From positions 124,001 to 188,000 of the IMG/VR virus record IMGVR_UViG_3300030019_000003: a stretch of DNA of 64,000 nt, one strand, 5' to 3'. Below the pieces are notes generated by a model, which was not told the origin of the DNA, did not search any database, and worked only from the letters and a program-made list of their open reading frames with translations. Both the position numbers and the translations under genes were made by a program. Positions 2,288-55,071 of the stretch are shown here, piece after piece; position 1 is the stretch's first letter, and every line of letters begins with the position of its first letter.

Positions 2288-2833
2288 ATGGATTACGCAC
2301 TCTATGAAAGAATGTTTAATGTTGTAAATGCTAGACTATTTACAAACCCTGCAGATAAGAGTTTACGCGGAAATGATCTAGCAAATGAGATTAGTTTTCA
2401 TATTTCAAATATGATTAATACTATTACAGGTAACTCGTTATTAACACAAAATAACAGAATGGACTGTATCAAAATAGTAATGGATAGACTTACAACACAA
2501 TACGAGCTTTCTAAAAGAATACTTTCATTGTTCGATGGTGAGACTATTACTATTGCTGATGTTAACAATGAAGTCTATGGCGATATAGTTGTTAACATCA
2601 TTATGGACAGGTTGGAGACAACTAAACAACATGAAAAGATCAGTAGTGCTTATCTACCGTTAAAAGTCTTTTTAAGTACAAATAAGTTAACTGTCGATGC
2701 TGAAGTTTCTCCTAGAGAAACATCATATCAAATATTTCTAGCTAATCCTGAATATGAAGCGTTGATTTGTAAACTTATAGCAGAGATCATCATGTCAAAA
2801 TCAGTTGCTGAGAGCATAAAGTTTACGTGGTAA
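2288..2833 (+). CDS. hypothetical protein (181 aa)
   Basis: GAGGAG RBS; intact ORF. Confidence 0.8.
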   Translation: MDYALYERMFNVVNARLFTNPADKSLRGNDLANEISFHISNMINTITGNSLLTQNNRMDCIKIVMDRLTTQYELSKRILSLFDGETITIADVNNEVYGDIVVNIIMDRLETTKQHEKISSAYLPLKVFLSTNKLTVDAEVSPRETSYQIFLANPEYEALICKLIAEIIMSKSVAESIKFTW

Positions 2834-3903: not shown

Positions 3904-6900
3904 ATGAAAAGCATTATTGAAAAAATGAGAGAGCAATTAGCCAGTGGCGCCAGTATTGGCTCTAAAAAAATAGCCATATCCATAAAACCTATACCTATGG
4001 AATCTTTAGAAGATTTAGGTAAAATGTGGGCTGTTGGTATTAAAGTAGGAAGATCTAAAAGAGTACCCTACAGTATGAAACCGCGAGAGATTAGTGATCT
4101 CATAAATATCGATGTCATAAAAGTGAGCAGTCAGTATACGGGTATAAGTACTTATATTAATTCTGTGCTATACAACGCAACTGAATCTAGCGCACATGAA
4201 CCGGTAGACACGGAATCGCTTAAAGAACGAGATATGCTGGATGATGTTCTCGGGTATTTTATCATACTATCTGCTTTAAAAGAAGATATTGAAGACGCCG
4301 CTGTACGCTCATCAATTGCAGGTGATGACATTAATATGCTATTCTGCAGGATAAACGCTGTGAAAGATTTCTATAGCCTTAAAGAACCTATAAAATTAGA
4401 GGCCTCACATTTAGAATATAGTGCGATTCACAGATTATCTTGGAAGACACCGTGCGGCAAACATTTATTTTTAGGAGATGTAAGTGACGATAGTATTAGC
4501 GGCTTTGAGGAAATGGGCGGTATAGATCTCATTATCTTGCAAAATGAAAATGAGATAGCTAAGAAAGTTGAAGAATCAACCACTACCGATAGTAAATCTA
4601 AGATACAAACTATCATAGATAAGATCGGTACAAATGCTGATAGAGGTAACCCTAACACTATCAGTATACGTTTTTACCTTAAAGGTGAGAATGTAGGCAC
4701 ACTTACAAGTGAGGAACTTGAGATTGCTGTTATTCTAAATGAAAAAATAGTGATAACAAATACCGACACCACGATGCATGATTTTACTTTGCTTATAGAC
4801 TATGTTTCAAAAATTATTAATGCGGAAATTGTTATAAATAATGTCGCATTTGATAAAAGATCATTTGGTATTGAATGCGGTGCTTTACCAGATAGTATTA
4901 AAGCAAATGTAAAAGGTCTTTATTTAATTTACAGATACTACTTCGGCGGCAAATATGGCTTTCAACTTTGTCCTACGAATTCGACGATGAAAATTCTTAA
5001 GGACTATTTTGGAGGGAGATCATATCATCCGGCGGCTGCATCGAAATTGGCTAGCGATGGGTATATGTGCCTGTTGGCAAGTTGTGTGTTTAAGGATACT
5101 GTCTCATTAGCAGTTGATATTGATAAACAAAGATCATACAAGGTACCCTACACAGATTTATACTTAGATATTGCCAATGGATCCTACAGGCTACATTTAG
5201 CAACAATAAGTTTAGAAGATTCAGAAAGTATTCGTGACCTTTATAACGATCTTCTTGTAAAAGGTATAGCGACTCTTAGTGACTTAATCCATATTACTAA
5301 AGAGCCTGTAGCGACGACATTTAAAGAACTTACCGGTATAGCTGAAATTAGCGACTGGAAGAAAACAGGTGATGAAGAAAATGTTGTTACAACACTAAAA
5401 GCTATAACAGAAGCGATATCAGTGCTTCTTGATGATAGTGTTAGTGACGATGGAAGCTTTACAACACACTCTTTAGATACACTTTATACAGCATTTAGTG
5501 GAATAATTGGTGACAGTGTTGTTGCCGAATATAATCGTCTGCCAGTGATGGTTCTAATTGTAGACAAAGTCAATGCGAATAGTTCTATAGTAGATCTTAA
5601 GTCTATTAAGTACATGATTGGTGATCCTAACGTCATACATCAGTGTGAACTTATATACGAGCACCCTTTTACAAAACAGATTAGGATTAATGAGTATTGT
5701 ATCCACTCAAATGTTTTGCCTAAGCACAATATTTATTTGTGTCAGGCTAACCGTATGTGTAATTCGTCAAAAGAAATTGCTAAAACGTTGGCTGAATCTT
5801 TAGCTGAAAGAAAACAACCTAAAAAAGAAGGAGAGAAAAGTATGGAAAATACCGCTAACCCTACTTCAGGAAATGTGCTGAATCATGAGACTGAAAAAGT
5901 TTCTATAATTAGGGATGACGTTAAAAGGCGCGTTGAAAACAATGTTATTCCACTGCTAAAAAACTTGGACGGTGATGCCGAAAGTGTTGCTGATACACTA
6001 AGTGATGTTTTAACACTGATGCGTGAAATTGCTGAAAGCGGAAAAGAAAGCTGTGCATCTTATAAGGTAGCAGTAGCTCAGATTAGGATTCTAAATTTAT
6101 TAAAGGAAGCCAGTCATACTGATATGTTTAGGATTATAGATATGGCTATTGCTATTAATGTTGTTGATGGCGAAAATAAACAGCTATTTCGATATGCCAC
6201 CACCGTACAATGTGTAAACCTACCGCGAATAAGTCGTGCCAGTTCAAAACGTTTACAGCATCTTGTGTTATTTCCTAAAAACTACATCATTGATATGCCA
6301 AATATCGGTGTTGCGAAGTTTGCGTTAAATTTGTTTACTGAAACACAGCAAACTACCTCAGATGGATCTACTGGATTTATGCCGACAGCGGATAAAAACG
6401 GGTTTGTTTCTACTGGCTATCCCGATATGCCACCAGTATATGGTAATCCTGGTTTTAATTTTGGAGGTTTTTATAATATTGGTAAGCAGTATCCTGATTA
6501 TAAAGCTGAAGATAAACAGGTATTCGATCGATTTAAATGTGCTAATACGTCTGGCGGTAAGATGTATGATATTCTAGAAGCAAAGCGTATGGAATTATTC
6601 GTACAGATGGAAAAATCATTAAGGGGCACTTCTGATAACTTTCGAAATTTAGCTGCTAATTACGATACTCTAGTTTCTAAGGTCGATACGCTACAAAAAC
6701 GTATAGATGTTTTAGAAAATGGTACTGCTGTTAAGAAGAGTTCTAAAAAAGAGACTGCTGAATTGTTAAAGTATTATGATAGTATTGCTATGCACGTCGG
6801 AAATATCCTGACGAGATATGGTTTAGACTATATTAGTAAACAAAATTCAGTAAGGCAACAAGGTGATAAAGATTTTGGTACGACCATACCCGATATTTTC

Positions 6901-44331: not shown

Positions 44332-44359
44332 TATGTAGTAGGGAATTCCCTACTACATA
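44332..44359. terminator. perfect 28-bp palindrome
   Basis: TATGTAGTAGGGAATTCCCTACTACATA overlapping a stop codon. Confidence 0.65.
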
Positions 44360-47318: not shown

Positions 47319-47342
47319 TATAAAATATTGCCAGTTAATTGA
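47319..47342 (+). promoter_or_regulatory. 24-bp intergenic motif, copy 1
   Basis: TATAAAATATTGCCAGTTAATTGA, 23/24 identical to 50894-50917. Confidence 0.6.
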
Positions 47343-47370: not shown

Positions 47371-48300
47371 ATGAATAAAGAACTAGCTGTTGAACATGCT
47401 GAAATCATCGAAAGTCTTAATGACATTAAAAAACACGGTGAATTCATGTCAACAATCGCACATGAAGATTTAGCTTCTGTTTTGGTTAGTATTAAACAGT
47501 ACTTTACTAAATTCATTCCAAATGTTGCTAAAGCATTTGCGGAAAATGCTGATAGATTAACAAAGTTTGATAAAGATCATTACAATAGTTTTATCAGACA
47601 GATCTATGAAATTGAAACAGATATTAAGAAAATTGCAGAGGTTCCTTATAGCTCTGTAATGGATGTTAAAGTACCTGTCATGCTAGGTATGAAACAAAAC
47701 CTACTCACCACAGCTAGCGAGCTTAAGAAAGCATCAACAGTTATCAATGATAATCTAAGAGTACTCCTAGAATATACTGACATCTTTATTTCACTTGTAT
47801 TGTCAAATGAAGATTTTAGAACAGCTTCTCGTGTTAACTATGCTATGTTGTATCAACGTTATCGCGAAGATCATAAGGGTAACCCTTTAACAGCTGATAA
47901 GATCTATGGTATTACCTATGAGCTAGAGGCTATTGTAGATAAACTTATTGACCCTAAGAATCATAGCGATCAAAGATTTATTAAGGAACTTGTTCCTAAT
48001 ATTAATAGTCTTTACTTCGTACAAGCAGATATACTAGAAGCTGCTAAAGGTACAACATTTGCAGATACTGAAAATATTCAAACTGAAGTAACAAAATTAT
48101 CAGAACGCGCTGATGTACTTTATGATGTTATCACAACGGATACAGAGTTTAAAATTAATAAAGCCTTGATCAATGAGTTAGCAGGTGTACTAGAAGATAG
48201 CGGTAGAGCTATTACTTCTGCAGTGACCCTATGGCACATTATGAATCAAACGGCAACCACATTAAAATTTACTGTTGACACTATCAAACGTTTTAAATAG
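47371..48300 (+). CDS. head/inner-body protein (phiKZ gp153 position)
   Basis: AAGGAAG RBS; helical 309 aa; synteny between UvsX and RNase H. Confidence 0.6.
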   Translation: MNKELAVEHAEIIESLNDIKKHGEFMSTIAHEDLASVLVSIKQYFTKFIPNVAKAFAENADRLTKFDKDHYNSFIRQIYEIETDIKKIAEVPYSSVMDVKVPVMLGMKQNLLTTASELKKASTVINDNLRVLLEYTDIFISLVLSNEDFRTASRVNYAMLYQRYREDHKGNPLTADKIYGITYELEAIVDKLIDPKNHSDQRFIKELVPNINSLYFVQADILEAAKGTTFADTENIQTEVTKLSERADVLYDVITTDTEFKINKALINELAGVLEDSGRAITSAVTLWHIMNQTATTLKFTVDTIKRFK

Positions 48301-48331
48301 TATAACACAGGGATATCCCTGTGTTATACTA
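48298..48331. terminator. perfect 34-bp palindrome between convergent genes
   Basis: TAGTATAACACAGGGATATCCCTGTGTTATACTA overlapping both stop codons. Confidence 0.75.
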
Positions 48332-49819
48332 AGATTTTTTACCTTTAGGTTTAGCACCTTGTAATAGAACGTTGTTATTATAGAAATTACACCATATAGA
48401 AATATCACCTGTTGTTCTACAGTCTATAAGGATATAATAGTTCAATAGGTTATCACCTACTTTTTTAATTACCAACATAACCTTTGGTTCAAGATCTTCT
48501 ATTTGTTTAAAATGGTCTCGAGTGATACAATCTTTACCTAAGAACACAGGGAACTTAATAATATTACCATCAAGATCAACATCCATAAGCATGAATGATT
48601 CTTTGTTAGTAATGTTTATAACGTTCTTACCTTTTTCATTTACGGTAAAGATTTTATCCGTTATATCAATATACTCTCTAAGAGGTTTTTCTTTATTTAG
48701 TTTAGAGTATTCGTCAACAATGTCATAGAGCAACACTGTTCTCTCTACAGCACTGTTAGCTAAACCTGGAGGGCGTATTGCTTTAACAACTGTTTCTTCA
48801 TCTCTGAACTTTAAAGCTGTAAAGTAATTATCAAAGTTATACATCTTCTCTTTAAAGAGTTCATGTAAGGTTCTGACATTTCTACTGTATAAAACATCAA
48901 GATCAATCGTTGAAATTAAAGCAGTTGGTCTTAACTTTTGAGTATACCATGAAATAACATCCTCTATTAAAGGTTGTTTGGTTTTTAAAGAAACCAATCC
49001 AAAGATAGCCTCATGTGATGCCCTACCTGGTTCAATATCCTTCTTATACTCCATAACACTATAGATAGCTCTTTCATCTTTTAAAGTAGTTATACCCATA
49101 AAGTATAAGTTACTAAATCTTAAGAAAGGATGCCTGTCTTCTGTACCTGGTGCGTAATACTTTTTAGCAGGACTAATTTTAAAATCAACCTCAGTTATAT
49201 TTTTATAACTGTACATTCTAGCCATAACGGCCATCCTGTCCGCATTGTTATTACCTAAAGATATAGAATGACCTTTAACCTTAACAAGATCTAGTTCTAT
49301 ATCTCTTACTTTGACTTCTCTCACAACTGTCCGCATCAATTCAACATAATCTAAATTCTTTTTAATACGATCTCTCCACGCAACTGCATCATAATTCTTA
49401 ACTGCATTATAAACAGCTATAGCGTACTCGCTGTCTAACTTTATGGTTATTTTTTTAATATCAAGATCTGTTATTTTTAATAACTCCATAAGTGTCAATG
49501 TTACAGCTTGGAGCTCTCCAGTATTATTAGTACCTGTCCCTTCAAAAGAATAACAGGCGTTAATATAGTGTGTTGGTGTAACATCTTGATATGGTTCTCG
49601 TTCTAGTTCATCTTTAAAAACATATCCTATATTTGTAACAGCATAATTAGTAGGTCTATTAGCTGTTTTCTTACCTAAAGATGACAATGGATAAACATAT
49701 CCATGAACACCAGAGCCCCAAAAACCAGGATTGGACGGACCACAACTTCCATCAGTGTAAGCCACGACGGCATATTCCTCAGCACTACTTATGGTTTCAG
49801 TATTTTTAATTTTACTCAT
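48329..49819 (-). CDS. rnhA: ribonuclease HI with C-terminal extension (phiKZ gp155-like)
   Basis: YTDGSC, TNNTGELQA, LDSEY, VKGHS, GNNNADRMA; GAGGA RBS before ATG 49819. Confidence 0.9.
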   Translation of the reverse strand: MSKIKNTETISSAEEYAVVAYTDGSCGPSNPGFWGSGVHGYVYPLSSLGKKTANRPTNYAVTNIGYVFKDELEREPYQDVTPTHYINACYSFEGTGTNNTGELQAVTLTLMELLKITDLDIKKITIKLDSEYAIAVYNAVKNYDAVAWRDRIKKNLDYVELMRTVVREVKVRDIELDLVKVKGHSISLGNNNADRMAVMARMYSYKNITEVDFKISPAKKYYAPGTEDRHPFLRFSNLYFMGITTLKDERAIYSVMEYKKDIEPGRASHEAIFGLVSLKTKQPLIEDVISWYTQKLRPTALISTIDLDVLYSRNVRTLHELFKEKMYNFDNYFTALKFRDEETVVKAIRPPGLANSAVERTVLLYDIVDEYSKLNKEKPLREYIDITDKIFTVNEKGKNVINITNKESFMLMDVDLDGNIIKFPVFLGKDCITRDHFKQIEDLEPKVMLVIKKVGDNLLNYYILIDCRTTGDISIWCNFYNNNVLLQGAKPKGKKS

Positions 49820-49899
49820 CAACATATCCTCTATTTGATTAAATTCTTTATACGAAATTCTTAACAGCTTGTAGCCATTATCTAAAGCTATTTTATTTT

Positions 49900-50691
49900 T
49901 TATAGCATCTCTTTTTTGTATGTTTTTTTAAGTTCTTCAATACCACCCCAACTGTTGTGCTTAAAATGTTGCCGTCCGTCATATTCAATAAGCAAGTTAT
50001 AATCTGGTAAATAAAAATCGTAACTATACCTGAATGGAACTATCTTGTATTGTCTAACAAATCTTATATTTTTAAAAGATAGCAATATATCTAGCTTATC
50101 CTCTCCTTTAGAATTTGTTTTACACCACGGGCAGCCAGCGCCCTGTAAATGCGAACTTGCATTTTGCTCAAAATCACCATGTTCTAAACATGTTATAATG
50201 ATCTTATTGCAATCTCCGGTATAGATTATGTTATCGTAATAATATCTTTCACCGTGTACATTTTTAGCGTCTGCTATAAATTGATCTTTAGTTTTTAATT
50301 TTAACTTACTTACATATTCCTCGCCACATTTTCTACACCCGTGACCGCTCATATGTAACTTCGGGCTTTGCATAAAATAACCGTGCTTGAAACATCTTAT
50401 TTTAACAGGGGTTACTCTATTTATAAAGTCTATTTCGGCATATCCGTATCTATCGCCGTGGGTTATTTTAGCTCTTTCTAGAAAAGATTCTTTCGTGACC
50501 TCTGTTTTCCCACCACACGTAAAACAACCTCTTCCTTGTATATGCGCGTACGCCTTTTGCTCAAAAGCGCCGTGCATGGGACATATGATTATAACTTTAT
50601 CATGTGCCCTAGTGTATATTGTTTTACTGTAGTCATATTTATTATTATGTATAAAATTAGCTCTTTTTATAAATAACTTTGTTCTATCCAA
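49900..50691 (-). CDS. free-standing endonuclease (three Zn-binding C..HG.F.Q...H..G.GC..C repeats plus PD-(D/E)xK Vsr-like domain), frameshifted near C-terminus
   Basis: YDFYLPDYNLLIEYDGRQHF; AAAGGA RBS before TTG 50691; expected tail KRDAIKN...LLRISY lies in another frame. Confidence 0.8.
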   Translation of the reverse strand: MDRTKLFIKRANFIHNNKYDYSKTIYTRAHDKVIIICPMHGAFEQKAYAHIQGRGCFTCGGKTEVTKESFLERAKITHGDRYGYAEIDFINRVTPVKIRCFKHGYFMQSPKLHMSGHGCRKCGEEYVSKLKLKTKDQFIADAKNVHGERYYYDNIIYTGDCNKIIITCLEHGDFEQNASSHLQGAGCPWCKTNSKGEDKLDILLSFKNIRFVRQYKIVPFRYSYDFYLPDYNLLIEYDGRQHFKHNSWGGIEELKKTYKKEML

Positions 50692-50725
50692 GTGAATTCC
50701 TTTCGCGTACACAGCTGTGTGTATG

Positions 50726-50854
50726 TTAAGTATTATCAGTGTGCGACATTAAGAAATAATAAGATTTAAATTTGGGATTTGCTGAACCATCACTGTAGCA
50801 GATTACAGCGTATTCTTCTGGAGCAGTTTCTTCCACTATTTTCTTAGAAGCCAT
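50726..50854 (-). pseudogene. stranded 5' fragment of RNase H
   Basis: Read manually: MASKKIVEETAPEEYAVICYSDGSANP plus 15 unrelated codons; matches EEYAVVAYTDGSCGP of the downstream RNase H; AAGGA RBS. Confidence 0.8.
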
Positions 50855-50893
50855 GATTTTATCCTTAAATCTATTTCTATTAAATACCCCTAA

Positions 50894-50917
50894 TATAAAA
50901 TATTGACAGTTAATTGA
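50894..50917 (+). promoter_or_regulatory. 24-bp intergenic motif, copy 2
   Basis: TATAAAATATTGACAGTTAATTGA. Confidence 0.6.
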
Positions 50918-50938
50918 ATATCACAGTAAAGGCTGGCT

Positions 50939-51448
50939 ATGAATGAAGAAATTGATACACTTGCAGTGCAGGAAGAAAACCCAGTTCCCGAGCCTACTGG
51001 CGAAACTGGAAATTTAAATAATAAAGATAGTGGATTTTTAACCACTAAAGACCAACAAATGTTGGATAAATCAATCGACTTAAGATTCAAAATAGTGGAT
51101 AACTTTTTTAAGGATGGTGACCCTACAGATAACCGAGATATCAGAGTTATAAATGAACTATTGACAGGTGTTGATGCGAGTATCCATAAGAGAGCTGAAT
51201 CACGATTAAAGTACACTTCTGTTAATAATACAGGTAAGCTTGTTGACATCGCTATAGCTACATTAAAAGCTAAGCGTAGTGGTAAAGTAGATGATCTTAT
51301 GCTACTTACAGGTACTGGAACTATTCCTAACATAACAGATGACATTATTGATGTTGAAATTGTTCACGGTGAACTAGAGCTTAATCCTGATCCATTAGAT
51401 ATTGAGGACTTTGTTAATAACGCACAATTACCTAAGGATCTACTATGA
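50939..51448 (+). CDS. conserved phiKZ-like protein (gp156 position)
   Basis: Acidic helical 169 aa; synteny. Confidence 0.6.
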   Translation: MNEEIDTLAVQEENPVPEPTGETGNLNNKDSGFLTTKDQQMLDKSIDLRFKIVDNFFKDGDPTDNRDIRVINELLTGVDASIHKRAESRLKYTSVNNTGKLVDIAIATLKAKRSGKVDDLMLLTGTGTIPNITDDIIDVEIVHGELELNPDPLDIEDFVNNAQLPKDLL

Positions 51449-52257
51449 CCATTAATGGACAGCGTACTATGTACGGTATACATGTTGAGTTAAGCAGGCT
51501 TTTAGGGAAAGAATACACGCCATTAGCAAATACAACTCTAAATGAAAAATTTGATATTATTCCTAATATTGAGTTAGCAGACTCGTTATATCCAACATTA
51601 GGTTATTATGCCATAGGTGTCGGCGGTGATCCTATTATTGTAGGCAACCCTGGGTATACTTATTCTAAACATTCTCCCGTAGATGCAGCTTTGTTTAAGC
51701 ATGTCCCATTTTTAATGCGAACACTTACCAATGATCTTAGTAATGATGAGCGCAGTGCCTACAGATTAAGAGTTATAGAAACTATTAACAATGTAGATTA
51801 TGCTTGTTATTATTTAAAAGCTATACCCTTAATAGAACTAAGGGATTATTTCTATAAAATAGTAACCGTTAATGATGAGACAGTACTTCGTGTTTTTACA
51901 ACAGATACAGATAAATTATTAAACCCTGTCCCTCAAACACGATCAGTAGATACAACAGACATTACAACTTCTAACTATGTTACTAACATAGCTAAACTAA
52001 AATTTGCTTTAACATTAACAGAGATGGAAGATTTAAAAACAGTTTTTAGTTTAAGAGGTATAAGTGAATTAAAAATCACTGAGATAGGATTAGTTATGGG
52101 TATAGATCAAACACAAGCAGACGGACTACCTGAGCTAGCAGTAGCGCAAATATCTCACCATGTAGAAGTATCATTAGATCTTGCAGTACAACTGGCTAAT
52201 GCTGAGAGTATTGTACGTGCTATTGAAATAGGTGGCAGTGAGCCGCTCTTACTATGA
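51445..52257 (+). CDS. virion structural protein (phiKZ gp157-like)
   Basis: NTTLNEKF, YYAIGVGG, DAALFKHVPF, YRLR, YYLK motifs. Confidence 0.75.
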   Translation: MTINGQRTMYGIHVELSRLLGKEYTPLANTTLNEKFDIIPNIELADSLYPTLGYYAIGVGGDPIIVGNPGYTYSKHSPVDAALFKHVPFLMRTLTNDLSNDERSAYRLRVIETINNVDYACYYLKAIPLIELRDYFYKIVTVNDETVLRVFTTDTDKLLNPVPQTRSVDTTDITTSNYVTNIAKLKFALTLTEMEDLKTVFSLRGISELKITEIGLVMGIDQTQADGLPELAVAQISHHVEVSLDLAVQLANAESIVRAIEIGGSEPLLL

Positions 52258-55039: not shown

Positions 55040-55071
55040 CTACAGAGACTGGGATATCCCAGTCTCTGTAG
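55040..55071. terminator. perfect 32-bp palindrome between convergent genes
   Basis: CTACAGAGACTGGGATATCCCAGTCTCTGTAG. Confidence 0.75.

What the first reader, a model, noticed from the sequence alone, without database searches (positions are those of the whole stretch)
48329..50854. Endonuclease invasion of RNase H with replacement of the gene's 5' end
Seen on minus strand: RBS plus 27 codons of an RNase H start (EEYAVICYSDGSANP) that break off just after the catalytic DGS; then a promoter-like TTTAAATCTTATTATTT (50754-50770), an RBS and an endonuclease; then a complete RNase H whose start is a diverged version of the same segment (EEYAVVAYTDGSCGPSNPG). No intron core or intein motif is visible. 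Known: homing endonucleases target conserved active-site codons; fungal mitochondrial ones can carry a duplicate gene fragment that repairs the disrupted gene. Inference: an intron-free homing cassette that splits its own target site and restores the host gene with a foreign, cleavage-resistant 5' end. I do not recall this strategy described for phage RNase H.
Basis: partly seen in the sequence, partly recalled or inferred. Interest (0 to 1): 0.85.

Follow-up and report, generated by a model that had tools for sequence, protein, structure and literature searches.

The report
Endonuclease invasion scar in phage Rhc
A selfish endonuclease gene, now itself broken, sits at the start of an essential replication gene of a jumbo phage; the gene's old first 27 codons survive as a dead stub, and a diverged start from a related genome now opens the working gene.

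Summary
On the minus strand there is an RBS, an ATG and 27 RNase H-like codons (50854-50774). The similarity ends five codons after the catalytic Asp. Next comes a free-standing endonuclease gene (50691-49900), then a complete 496-aa RNase H (49819-48329).

- **Stub:** it is significant (profile E=9e-5 against the whole window). It differs from the working start mostly at synonymous sites (7 of 10 changed codons). The two starts therefore diverged as working genes in separate genomes.
- **Relatives:** about 25 syntenic relatives have neither stub nor endonuclease. The stub sits exactly where their gene starts.
- **Introns:** no intron is detectable.
- **Target gene:** it is the chimallivirus Rhc (RNase H-clamp), an essential polymerase subunit.
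- **Endonuclease:** it has Zn-finger repeats and a Vsr-like PD-(D/E)XK domain. A frameshift in an A7 run breaks it, and its tail runs in phase into Rhc with no stop.

My reading is a one-off, one-sided homing event: homologous repair inside Rhc and an illegitimate join upstream. I do not think it is an evolved cassette, because flanking duplicates occur in at most 1 of 86 related endonuclease loci. No donor or uninvaded close relative was found, so the cleavage site, the polarity and the tract length remain inferred.

The parts
50855..50938 (.). Divergent intergenic spacer in its ancestral position, shared by the stub and the 169-aa gene on the + strand. It carries a 24-nt motif (50894-50917) that recurs at 47319 in another divergent spacer.
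   Evidence: 2 matches, 0 expected. Relatives L005 and L006 start their RNase H at the equivalent place.
50774..50866 (-). Stub of the original RNase H (Rhc) start: RBS AAGGA (50866-50862), ATG 50854 and 27 homologous codons that include the first catalytic Asp (the DGS motif).
   Evidence: (E=9e-5).
50726..50773 (-). Read-out of the stub ORF into unrelated sequence (15 codons and a stop). The left junction lies at about 50774/50773.
50692..50725 (-). Short spacer with the endonuclease RBS AAAGGA (50703-50698). It contains a 12-nt palindrome and no terminator-like hairpin.
49900..50691 (-). Endonuclease gene, piece 1 (263 aa from TTG 50691): three DUF723/CapR-like Zn-finger repeats and the first half of a Vsr/PvuRts1I-like PD-(D/E)XK nuclease domain. 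It ends at a premature TAA (49902-49900).
   Evidence: (phrog_559 positions 125-376).
49923..49929 (-). A7 run where the endonuclease frame breaks. The simplest lesion is loss of one A from an A8 run. It is identical in all assemblies.
   Evidence: One search shows no stimulatory RNA structure (z=-0.41).
49820..49927 (-). Endonuclease gene, piece 2. The conserved C-terminal helix and strand of the nuclease domain are read in the RNase H frame. There is no stop codon before the RNase H ATG. The RNase H RBS GAGGA (49831-49827) lies inside it.
   Evidence: phrog_559 positions 373-404, E=6e-6; homologues end a median of 17 aa after the last strand.
48329..49819 (-). Complete RNase H-clamp (Rhc) gene of 496 aa. 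The catalytic D23, E102, D129, H184 and D194 are conserved. Its first ~31 codons are the diverged duplicate of the stub.
   Evidence: (phrog_3265 positions 6-492 of 496), and PMC13648698.
48298..48331 (.). 34-nt perfect palindrome (terminator-like hairpin) between the convergent Rhc and 309-aa genes.
   Evidence: I5.

Best explanation
The window comes from a chimallivirus-like jumbo phage. Its essential RNase H-clamp gene (Rhc) carries the scar of a homing-endonuclease invasion.

**Shown**
- The old promoter-proximal start of Rhc (RBS, ATG, 27 codons) lies in its ancestral place.
- It is followed by a free-standing endonuclease gene with Zn-finger repeats and a Vsr-like PD-(D/E)XK domain.
- That gene is followed by a complete Rhc with its own RBS, whose start is a diverged allele of the same segment.

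**Inferred**
- In a mixed infection, a related phage that carried the endonuclease directly upstream of its own Rhc cut the endonuclease-free allele. The cut fell at or just downstream of the codons after the catalytic Asp.
- The downstream end was repaired by homologous recombination inside Rhc. This copied the donor's endonuclease gene and Rhc start.
- The upstream end was joined illegitimately, as in 'one-sided' homing in T4. The recipient's first 27 codons were therefore stranded instead of replaced.
- Because Rhc is essential, only products with a whole gene survived.
- Rhc is probably now transcribed from the old upstream promoter through the stub and the endonuclease gene, and translated from its own RBS.
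- With no targets left, the endonuclease has begun to decay through a single-base frameshift.
For: - **Architecture:**
- **Stub significance:**
- **Divergence pattern:** in 14 aligned codons, 4 are identical, 7 differ only synonymously and 3 change the residue. Nine of the 15 base differences are at third positions. Random neutral decay gave the observed 11 of 14 identical residues in 0 of 100,000 trials. The copies therefore diverged under selection in separate genomes and were joined recently.
- **Stub is undecayed:** it keeps its RBS, ATG and open frame.
- **Synteny:** the order RuvC, DUF7208, p169, then Rhc, p309 and UvsX is conserved. About 25 relatives lack both stub and endonuclease.
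- **Stub position:** it abuts a native spacer that carries a motif repeated elsewhere in the phage.
- **Endonuclease family:** it is multi-copy and sporadic in phages, with 2692 places in 1081 records, and is annotated as homing endonuclease. DUF723-type Zn-finger repeats are known DNA-binding modules of phage homing endonucleases (PMC10448857).
- **Target:** Rhc is essential (PMC13648698).
- **Mechanistic precedent:** one-sided illegitimate DSB repair during homing is documented for T4 (PMC2988022, citing Parker et al. 1999).
- **One-off event:** flanking duplicates are rare in this family, at most 1 of 86 loci.
Against: - No donor and no uninvaded close relative was found. The nearest Rhc is 46-47% identical and the nearest endonuclease about 45%.
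- The cut site, the polarity and the length of the converted tract are therefore all inferred.
- The working 5' end belongs to the same allele class as the nearest relatives (DGSCGPxN), while the stub resembles more distant ones (DGSANP). That is not what one would naively expect if the stub were the native allele.
- The endonuclease is frameshifted in all six samples, so its activity was never shown.
- Its tail is fused in phase to Rhc without a stop. A simple 'free-standing gene upstream of Rhc' donor does not predict this.
- GC content shows no foreign block.
Confidence: 0.55

Rival explanations
1. One reading: a dedicated intron-free homing cassette, a mirror image of the fungal mitochondrial mORF elements. 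Its regular cargo is the endonuclease gene plus a cleavage-resistant replacement 5' end of Rhc. It therefore always splits the target and restores the gene.
For: - The architecture mirrors mORF hybrids, which run core gene, foreign end, endonuclease ORF, displaced native end. In those hybrids the ORF is often in phase with the host gene and lacks a stop (PMC3630166).
- Here the endonuclease tail is in phase with Rhc and lacks a stop.
- The two copies are diverged alleles.
- One further locus of the same endonuclease family (L045) has a 52-codon diverged 5' duplicate of the neighbouring gene on either side of the endonuclease.
Against: - None of ~25 other Rhc loci is invaded.
- Among 86 loci of this family, only L045 shows a comparable flanking duplicate. 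There the endonuclease is on the opposite strand and the copies may simply be paralogues.
- No second copy of this unit exists in any collection searched.
Confidence: 0.17
2. Reverse polarity: the working Rhc, including its start, is native. The stub and endonuclease came in together from a donor and were joined illegitimately to the native 5' UTR.
For: - The working 5' end matches the allele class of the closest relatives, and its first 50 residues are 54% identical to L005 against 46% overall.
- The endonuclease-Rhc junction is an abrupt in-phase fusion that lacks the endonuclease's own stop.
Against: - It needs a donor whose essential Rhc was already interrupted after codon 27 with no working copy, or a donor that already had today's structure, which only moves the problem back.
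- The stub is contiguous with a spacer that carries a motif native to this phage.
Confidence: 0.12
3. Local tandem duplication of the Rhc start in this genome, with the endonuclease landing between the copies and the copies then drifting apart.
For: Both copies lie in one genome, on the same strand and in the same frame.
Against: - The differences are concentrated at synonymous sites. An unselected stub with 36% base divergence would not keep 11 of 14 residues (0 of 100,000 simulations).
- The stub shows no stop or frameshift within the 27 codons.
Confidence: 0.03
4. The stub is a true first exon. An undetected self-splicing intron, or a recoding event, joins it to the Rhc body, and the internal copy of the start is intron sequence.
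For: Stub and Rhc are in the same frame. Joining the stub's last Asn-Pro to the Gly that follows the resident Asn-Pro would give a plausible RNase H of the DGSANPG type, close to relative P0003.
Against: - There is no group I or II intron signal at E<=1 and none at gathering score in the window.
- Only about 80 nt of non-coding sequence lies upstream of the endonuclease ORF.
- The internal copy has its own RBS, ATG and catalytic Asp, and resembles relatives at protein level.
Confidence: 0.03

Closest known systems
Fungal mitochondrial mobile ORF elements with duplicated gene ends (Allomyces macrogynus atp6; Glomus atp6, atp9, cox2, nad3; PMC3630166)
   Same: - An endonuclease ORF inserted in a conserved gene.
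- A diverged, probably foreign copy of the gene end completes the working gene.
- The native end is displaced as a stub.
- Differences between the copies are largely synonymous.
- The ORF can be in phase with the host gene and lack a stop.
   Different: - The polarity is mirrored: here the 5' end is duplicated and the endonuclease lies upstream of the working gene.
- The host is a phage rather than an organelle.
- The nuclease is Zn-finger plus Vsr-like PD-(D/E)XK, not LAGLIDADG or GIY-YIG.
- Only one lineage is known and there is no uninvaded sister to prove which copy is native.
- The elements are recurrent in fungi but not here.
Intronless homing by free-standing phage endonucleases (T4 SegF, SegG, MobE), and one-sided illegitimate DSB repair in T4 homing (PMC2988022)
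   Same: - A free-standing endonuclease gene next to a conserved essential gene.
- Spread by DSB repair, with co-conversion of flanking donor sequence.
- Illegitimate junctions arise when homology is available on one side only.
   Different: - Ordinary intronless homing replaces the flank cleanly and leaves no duplicate.
- Here a 27-codon stub of the recipient remains.
- The nuclease family is different.
- Activity is untested and the gene is frameshifted.
Genes split by endonuclease insertion (Aeh1 nrdA/mobE, T4 gene 39/60 mobA; PMC2988022)
   Same: The endonuclease is inserted into the coding region of an essential replication or nucleotide-metabolism gene, close to functionally critical residues.
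   Different: In those cases both halves are used and reassemble as subunits. Here the first fragment is redundant, because a whole gene follows.
Intron-encoded homing endonuclease of PhiPA3 that targets the PhiKZ RNA polymerase gene (PMC11620839; reviewed in PMC12908238)
   Same: A homing endonuclease in a nucleus-forming jumbo phage lineage that targets an essential information-processing gene.
   Different: That one is carried by a self-splicing group I intron. Here no intron is detectable, and the gene is kept whole by a duplicated 5' end.

Membership tests
Free-standing homing endonuclease gene | Encodes a nuclease of a recognised endonuclease fold joined to a sequence-reading DNA-binding module. 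| tested here: met
   - Three DUF723/CapR-like Zn-finger repeats (PMC10448857).
- The nuclease domain of homologues hits DUF2726, PvuRts1I-like_N and DUF559. It weakly hits AbaSI (E=0.07) and T7 endonuclease I in the PDB.
- The conserved D, E and H of the FDFYLPD...IEYDGxQH motif are present.
- The fold assignment rests on weak profile hits.
Free-standing homing endonuclease gene | Sporadic presence or absence at one site among otherwise syntenic relatives. | tested here: met
   It is present only in this phage and absent from about 25 syntenic Rhc loci.
Free-standing homing endonuclease gene | Intact reading frame. | tested here: not met
   A frameshift at the A7 run 49929-49923 splits the nuclease domain. 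It is identical in six samples.
Free-standing homing endonuclease gene | Cuts the endonuclease-free allele near the insertion site while its own allele is resistant. | not testable with these tools
   This needs a cleavage assay. The break five codons after the catalytic Asp, and the three extra codons plus many silent changes in the resident allele, fit the idea but are not a test.
Mitochondrial-type mORF element with duplicated gene end | Endonuclease ORF flanked by a working, diverged gene end and a displaced stub of the same segment. | tested here: met
Mitochondrial-type mORF element with duplicated gene end | The displaced copy matches the uninvaded sister taxon and the working copy is the foreign one. 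| tested here: inconclusive
   There is no close sister; the nearest relative is 46% identical. At that distance the working copy looks more like the nearest relatives than the stub does.
Mitochondrial-type mORF element with duplicated gene end | The same unit, endonuclease plus gene-end cargo, recurs in several genomes or genes. | tested here: not met
   No second instance at Rhc was found. At most 1 of 86 loci of the family (L045) shows a comparable duplicate.
Group I or II intron carrying an endonuclease | Ribozyme core flanking the ORF. | tested here: not met
   Rfam gives no intron family at E<=1 in 47500-51500 and none at gathering score in the window. Very divergent cores could escape detection.
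Intein | In-frame insertion with Hint splicing blocks and no stops. | tested here: not met
   There are several stops between the stub and the endonuclease and no Hint or intein domain in Pfam.
Chimallivirus Rhc (RNase H-clamp) | N-terminal RNase HI domain with the catalytic carboxylates, about 300 aa of C-terminal extension, and full-length homology to the chimallivirus protein. | tested here: met
   - Pfam RNase_H hit at 7e-14.
- phrog_3265 matched over positions 6-492 of 496.
- 60 jumbo-phage records, including Goslar, matched over at least 88% of the length.
- D23, E102, D129, H184 and D194 are invariant.
- The UvsX synteny is shared.
- The clamp fold itself was not modelled here.

The most novel reading that the evidence does not exclude
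The in-phase, stop-less junction between the endonuclease and Rhc is functional. A -1 slip at the A7 run, or the ancestral A8 allele, yields an endonuclease-Rhc fusion protein. The fusion rides Rhc's import route into the phage nucleus. This would give a homing endonuclease access to the enclosed genomes of co-infecting nucleus-forming phages, which otherwise exclude foreign nucleases. The duplicated, diverged 5' end would then be the price of placing the endonuclease in phase in front of an essential imported protein.
Probability: 0.05. Interest if true: 0.85.

Novelty: new variant of a known kind. Interest (0 to 1): 0.5.

Why it matters
Homing endonucleases usually need an intron or intein to sit inside an essential gene. 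Otherwise they sit beside the gene and leave no trace.

Here an invasion has left a footprint: the old gene start is stranded next to its replacement. If the model is right, the footprint marks the probable cut site, five codons after the catalytic Asp of Rhc. It also shows that one-sided, illegitimate repair happens in nature. And it gives a phage counterpart, with mirrored polarity, to the gene-end duplications of fungal mitochondria.

The target is topical. Rhc has just been shown to be an essential polymerase subunit of nucleus-forming phages, and endonuclease-mediated competition is an active question in that group.

The case rests on one lineage and a decayed endonuclease, so it is a lead rather than a demonstrated mechanism.

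Tried and rejected
**Searches for an uninvaded close relative or a donor (none found)**
- Megablast of the 3.2-kb block against 50,697 phage records gave no match.
- Protein searches gave a nearest Rhc at 47% identity and a nearest endonuclease at about 45%.
- Scans of viral and metagenome collections with the protein, an alignment and a degenerate pattern for the stub peptide returned only the same phage.
- A first alignment was too diverse for the locus finder.

**Ideas tested and dropped**
- Intron: Rfam found nothing.
- Programmed frameshift: there is no structure downstream of the A7 run, z=-0.41, and the run is not a canonical X_XXY_YYZ heptamer in the zero frame.
- Foreign composition: GC is flat at 0.31-0.37.
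- Recombination boundary inside Rhc: the identity profile against L005 shows no usable discontinuity at this divergence.
- Other copies of the endonuclease in the window: none.

**Survey hits that turned out not to be analogues**
- L102 is a pair of ribbon-helix-helix paralogues.
- L129 is a repeated promoter in front of tandem endonuclease genes.

**Other**
- PDB sequence search with the endonuclease alone gave nothing useful.
Full report
**What is in the sequence**

Read on the minus strand, 50938 to 48298 holds the following:
- An 84-nt spacer shared with a divergently transcribed 169-aa gene.
- An RBS (AAGGA, 50866-50862) and an ATG at 50854.
- 27 codons that look like the start of an RNase H, including the DGS motif with the first catalytic Asp.
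- At 50774/50773 the similarity stops. The frame runs 15 more codons to a stop at 50726.
- After a short spacer with a second RBS (50703-50698), an endonuclease gene starts at TTG 50691 (or GTG 50712) and stops at 49900.
- A third RBS (GAGGA, 49831-49827) and an ATG at 49819 open a 496-aa RNase H that ends at 48329.
- A 34-nt perfect hairpin follows.

**Is the stub more than chance?**

- I built a profile from the N-termini of 31 relatives, leaving out the window's own gene. I searched all 2131 stop-to-stop pieces of the window in six frames. The stub is the second-best hit after the real gene, at E=9e-5.
- A direct tblastn gives E=2e-4.
- A DNA alignment of the two regions scores 4.4 sd above shuffles.
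- The stub has its own RBS and ATG at the right distance.
- It lies exactly where the syntenic relatives L005 and L006 start their RNase H, opposite the homologue of the 169-aa gene.
- The spacer next to it carries a 24-nt motif that recurs, with one mismatch, in another divergent spacer of the same phage at 47319. Zero matches are expected by chance. The stub is therefore contiguous with native sequence.

**It is not an assembly artefact**

Contigs from six different samples carry the identical layout. These contigs show only two single-base differences from the window, both outside the finding. All carry the same A7 run.

**The target gene**

- The 496-aa protein has a Pfam RNase_H domain.
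- It matches PHROG 3265 end to end.
- It matches 60 jumbo-phage records over most of its length, including Goslar and the Ea35-70, RSL2 and Psa21 groups.
- It shares the RNase H, small gene, UvsX synteny of those phages.
- The five RNase HI catalytic positions are invariant in an alignment of 23 homologues.
- This family was recently described as Rhc (RNase H-clamp). It is an essential subunit of the chimallivirus DNA polymerase and is also needed for late transcription (PMC13648698). I did not check the gene numbering between that paper and the Goslar record.
- An essential, conserved replication gene is a typical homing target.

**The endonuclease**

- The first 263 residues hold three DUF723-type Zn-finger repeats and the start of a nuclease domain.
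- Such repeats are the DNA-binding modules of many phage homing endonucleases (PMC10448857).
- The family is very large and is multi-copy in phage genomes. There are 2692 places in 1081 records, up to 18 in one genome. It is variously annotated as homing endonuclease or very-short-patch-repair endonuclease.
- The nuclease domains of 20 homologues hit DUF2726, PvuRts1I-like_N and DUF559. As a profile they hit AbaSI and T7 endonuclease I weakly. The domain is therefore a Vsr-like PD-(D/E)XK domain, but the assignment is weak.
- The gene is broken. At the A7 run 49929-49923 the frame shifts. The conserved C-terminal helix and strand of the domain continue in the -1 frame.
- PHROG 559 matches piece 1 at profile positions 125-376 and piece 2 at 373-404.
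- The simplest lesion is the loss of one A from an A8 run.
- The second piece is in the RNase H frame, and there is no stop before the RNase H ATG.
- Homologues end a median of 17 residues after their last strand. The endonuclease's own end and stop are therefore missing, and the junction with Rhc is an in-phase fusion.
- Nothing supports programmed frameshifting.

**The two starts are diverged alleles, not a local duplicate**

- In the 14 codons that align without doubt, 4 are identical, 7 differ only synonymously (including a TCA/AGT serine switch) and 3 change the residue.
- Nine of the 15 base differences are at third positions.
- When 15 random substitutions are placed on these 42 bases, 11 of 14 residues stay identical in none of 100,000 trials.
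- Both copies therefore evolved under selection for the protein, in different genomes, and were brought together recently enough that the stub has not decayed.
- The block was chosen because it aligns, which inflates the contrast somewhat.

**Relatives**

- The nearest Rhc genes are 47% and 39% identical.
- Across about 25 loci from viral and metagenome collections, and five cultured chimalliviruses, none has a stub or an endonuclease near Rhc. The invaded state is therefore derived and, so far, unique.
- No intron family is detected.
- Stops between the stub and the endonuclease exclude an intein.

**Which copy is native?**

- Position argues for the stub, which sits in the ancestral place next to a native spacer.
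- Sequence does not help much. The working start has the DGSCGPxN form of the nearest relatives, while the stub has the shorter DGSANP form seen in P0003 and L006.
- All six genes of the neighbourhood, Rhc included, are closer to L005 than to L006. The donor was therefore a member of the same clade.
- Whether only the 5' end or the whole gene was replaced cannot be resolved.
- GC content is flat.

**Mechanism**

The best fit is intronless homing that went wrong on one side.
- A donor carried the endonuclease directly upstream of its Rhc.
- The recipient allele was cut near the codons after the catalytic Asp.
- The downstream end invaded the donor's Rhc and copied leftwards through the donor's start and the endonuclease.
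- The upstream end was joined without homology.
- One-sided events with illegitimate junctions are documented for T4 intron homing (PMC2988022).
- The reverse polarity, with stub and endonuclease imported, needs a donor with a dead essential gene and is less economical.

**Is it an evolved cassette?**

To test it, I looked for flanking duplicates around 6 + 80 other loci of this endonuclease family.
- Four of 80 showed any upstream/downstream similarity at E<=1e-3, against 1 of 80 in mismatched controls. On inspection none of the four was analogous.
- One of the six (L045) has a 52-codon, 40%-identical copy of the neighbouring gene's start on the far side of the endonuclease. That may be a second case or just a pair of paralogues.

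The duplication is therefore not a regular part of this element. I rate the cassette model at about 0.17.

**Other points**

Rhc is probably transcribed from the old spacer through the stub and the endonuclease, since no terminator-like hairpin lies between them.
- A speculative reading is that the stop-less fusion once let the endonuclease enter the phage nucleus with Rhc (PMC12908238, PMC13648698). I give this about 5%.

**Verdict**

This is a real and tidy invasion scar in an essential jumbo-phage gene. It is a new variant of known homing biology. It rests on one lineage and a decayed endonuclease, and the key mechanistic claims are still inferred.

Noticed in passing
window 49820-49929 (minus strand): The endonuclease's C-terminal piece is in the same frame as Rhc with no stop between them. 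A -1 slip at the A7 run, or an A8 allele, would make an ~800-aa endonuclease-Rhc fusion. The stub is also in this frame.
   Followed up: partly
window 50894-50917 and 47319-47342 (+ strand): A 24-nt motif (TATAAAATATTGACAGTTAATTGA, one mismatch in the second copy) lies a few tens of bases upstream of the ATG of a + strand gene in each of two divergent spacers. Zero matches are expected by chance. It is a candidate phage promoter.
   Followed up: partly
window 48298-48331; also about 55040-55071 and 44332-44359: Perfect palindromes of 28-34 nt lie between genes. The one at 48298 sits between the convergent Rhc and 309-aa genes and is followed by a T run on the + strand, so it is terminator-like.
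   Followed up: no
L045:2350-4506: A homologue of the endonuclease (P0061, + strand) lies between a 77-aa ORF (4273-4506, minus strand) and a 121-aa ORF (2350-2715, minus strand). Their first 52 residues are 40% identical (E=5e-10) and they then diverge. This is either a second stranded-5'-end case or a pair of paralogues. PHROGs gave no family for either.
   Followed up: partly
L045:2847-3014; L102 about 2680-2889: Small ribbon-helix-helix-like ORFs sit directly upstream of, or overlap the start of, endonuclease homologues. They are possibly a regulator that travels with the endonuclease gene.
   Followed up: no
window 52088 (locus L009): One sample (3300029990) has a single-base deletion that splits the 270-aa DUF7208 gene into 53- and 215-aa ORFs. 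It is the only indel found among the assemblies of this phage.
   Followed up: no
L129:2841-2906 and 4249-4323: A 63-nt repeat at 90% identity, with a TTGACA...TATAAT-like core, precedes each of two tandem endonuclease genes of this family in another viral contig.
   Followed up: no
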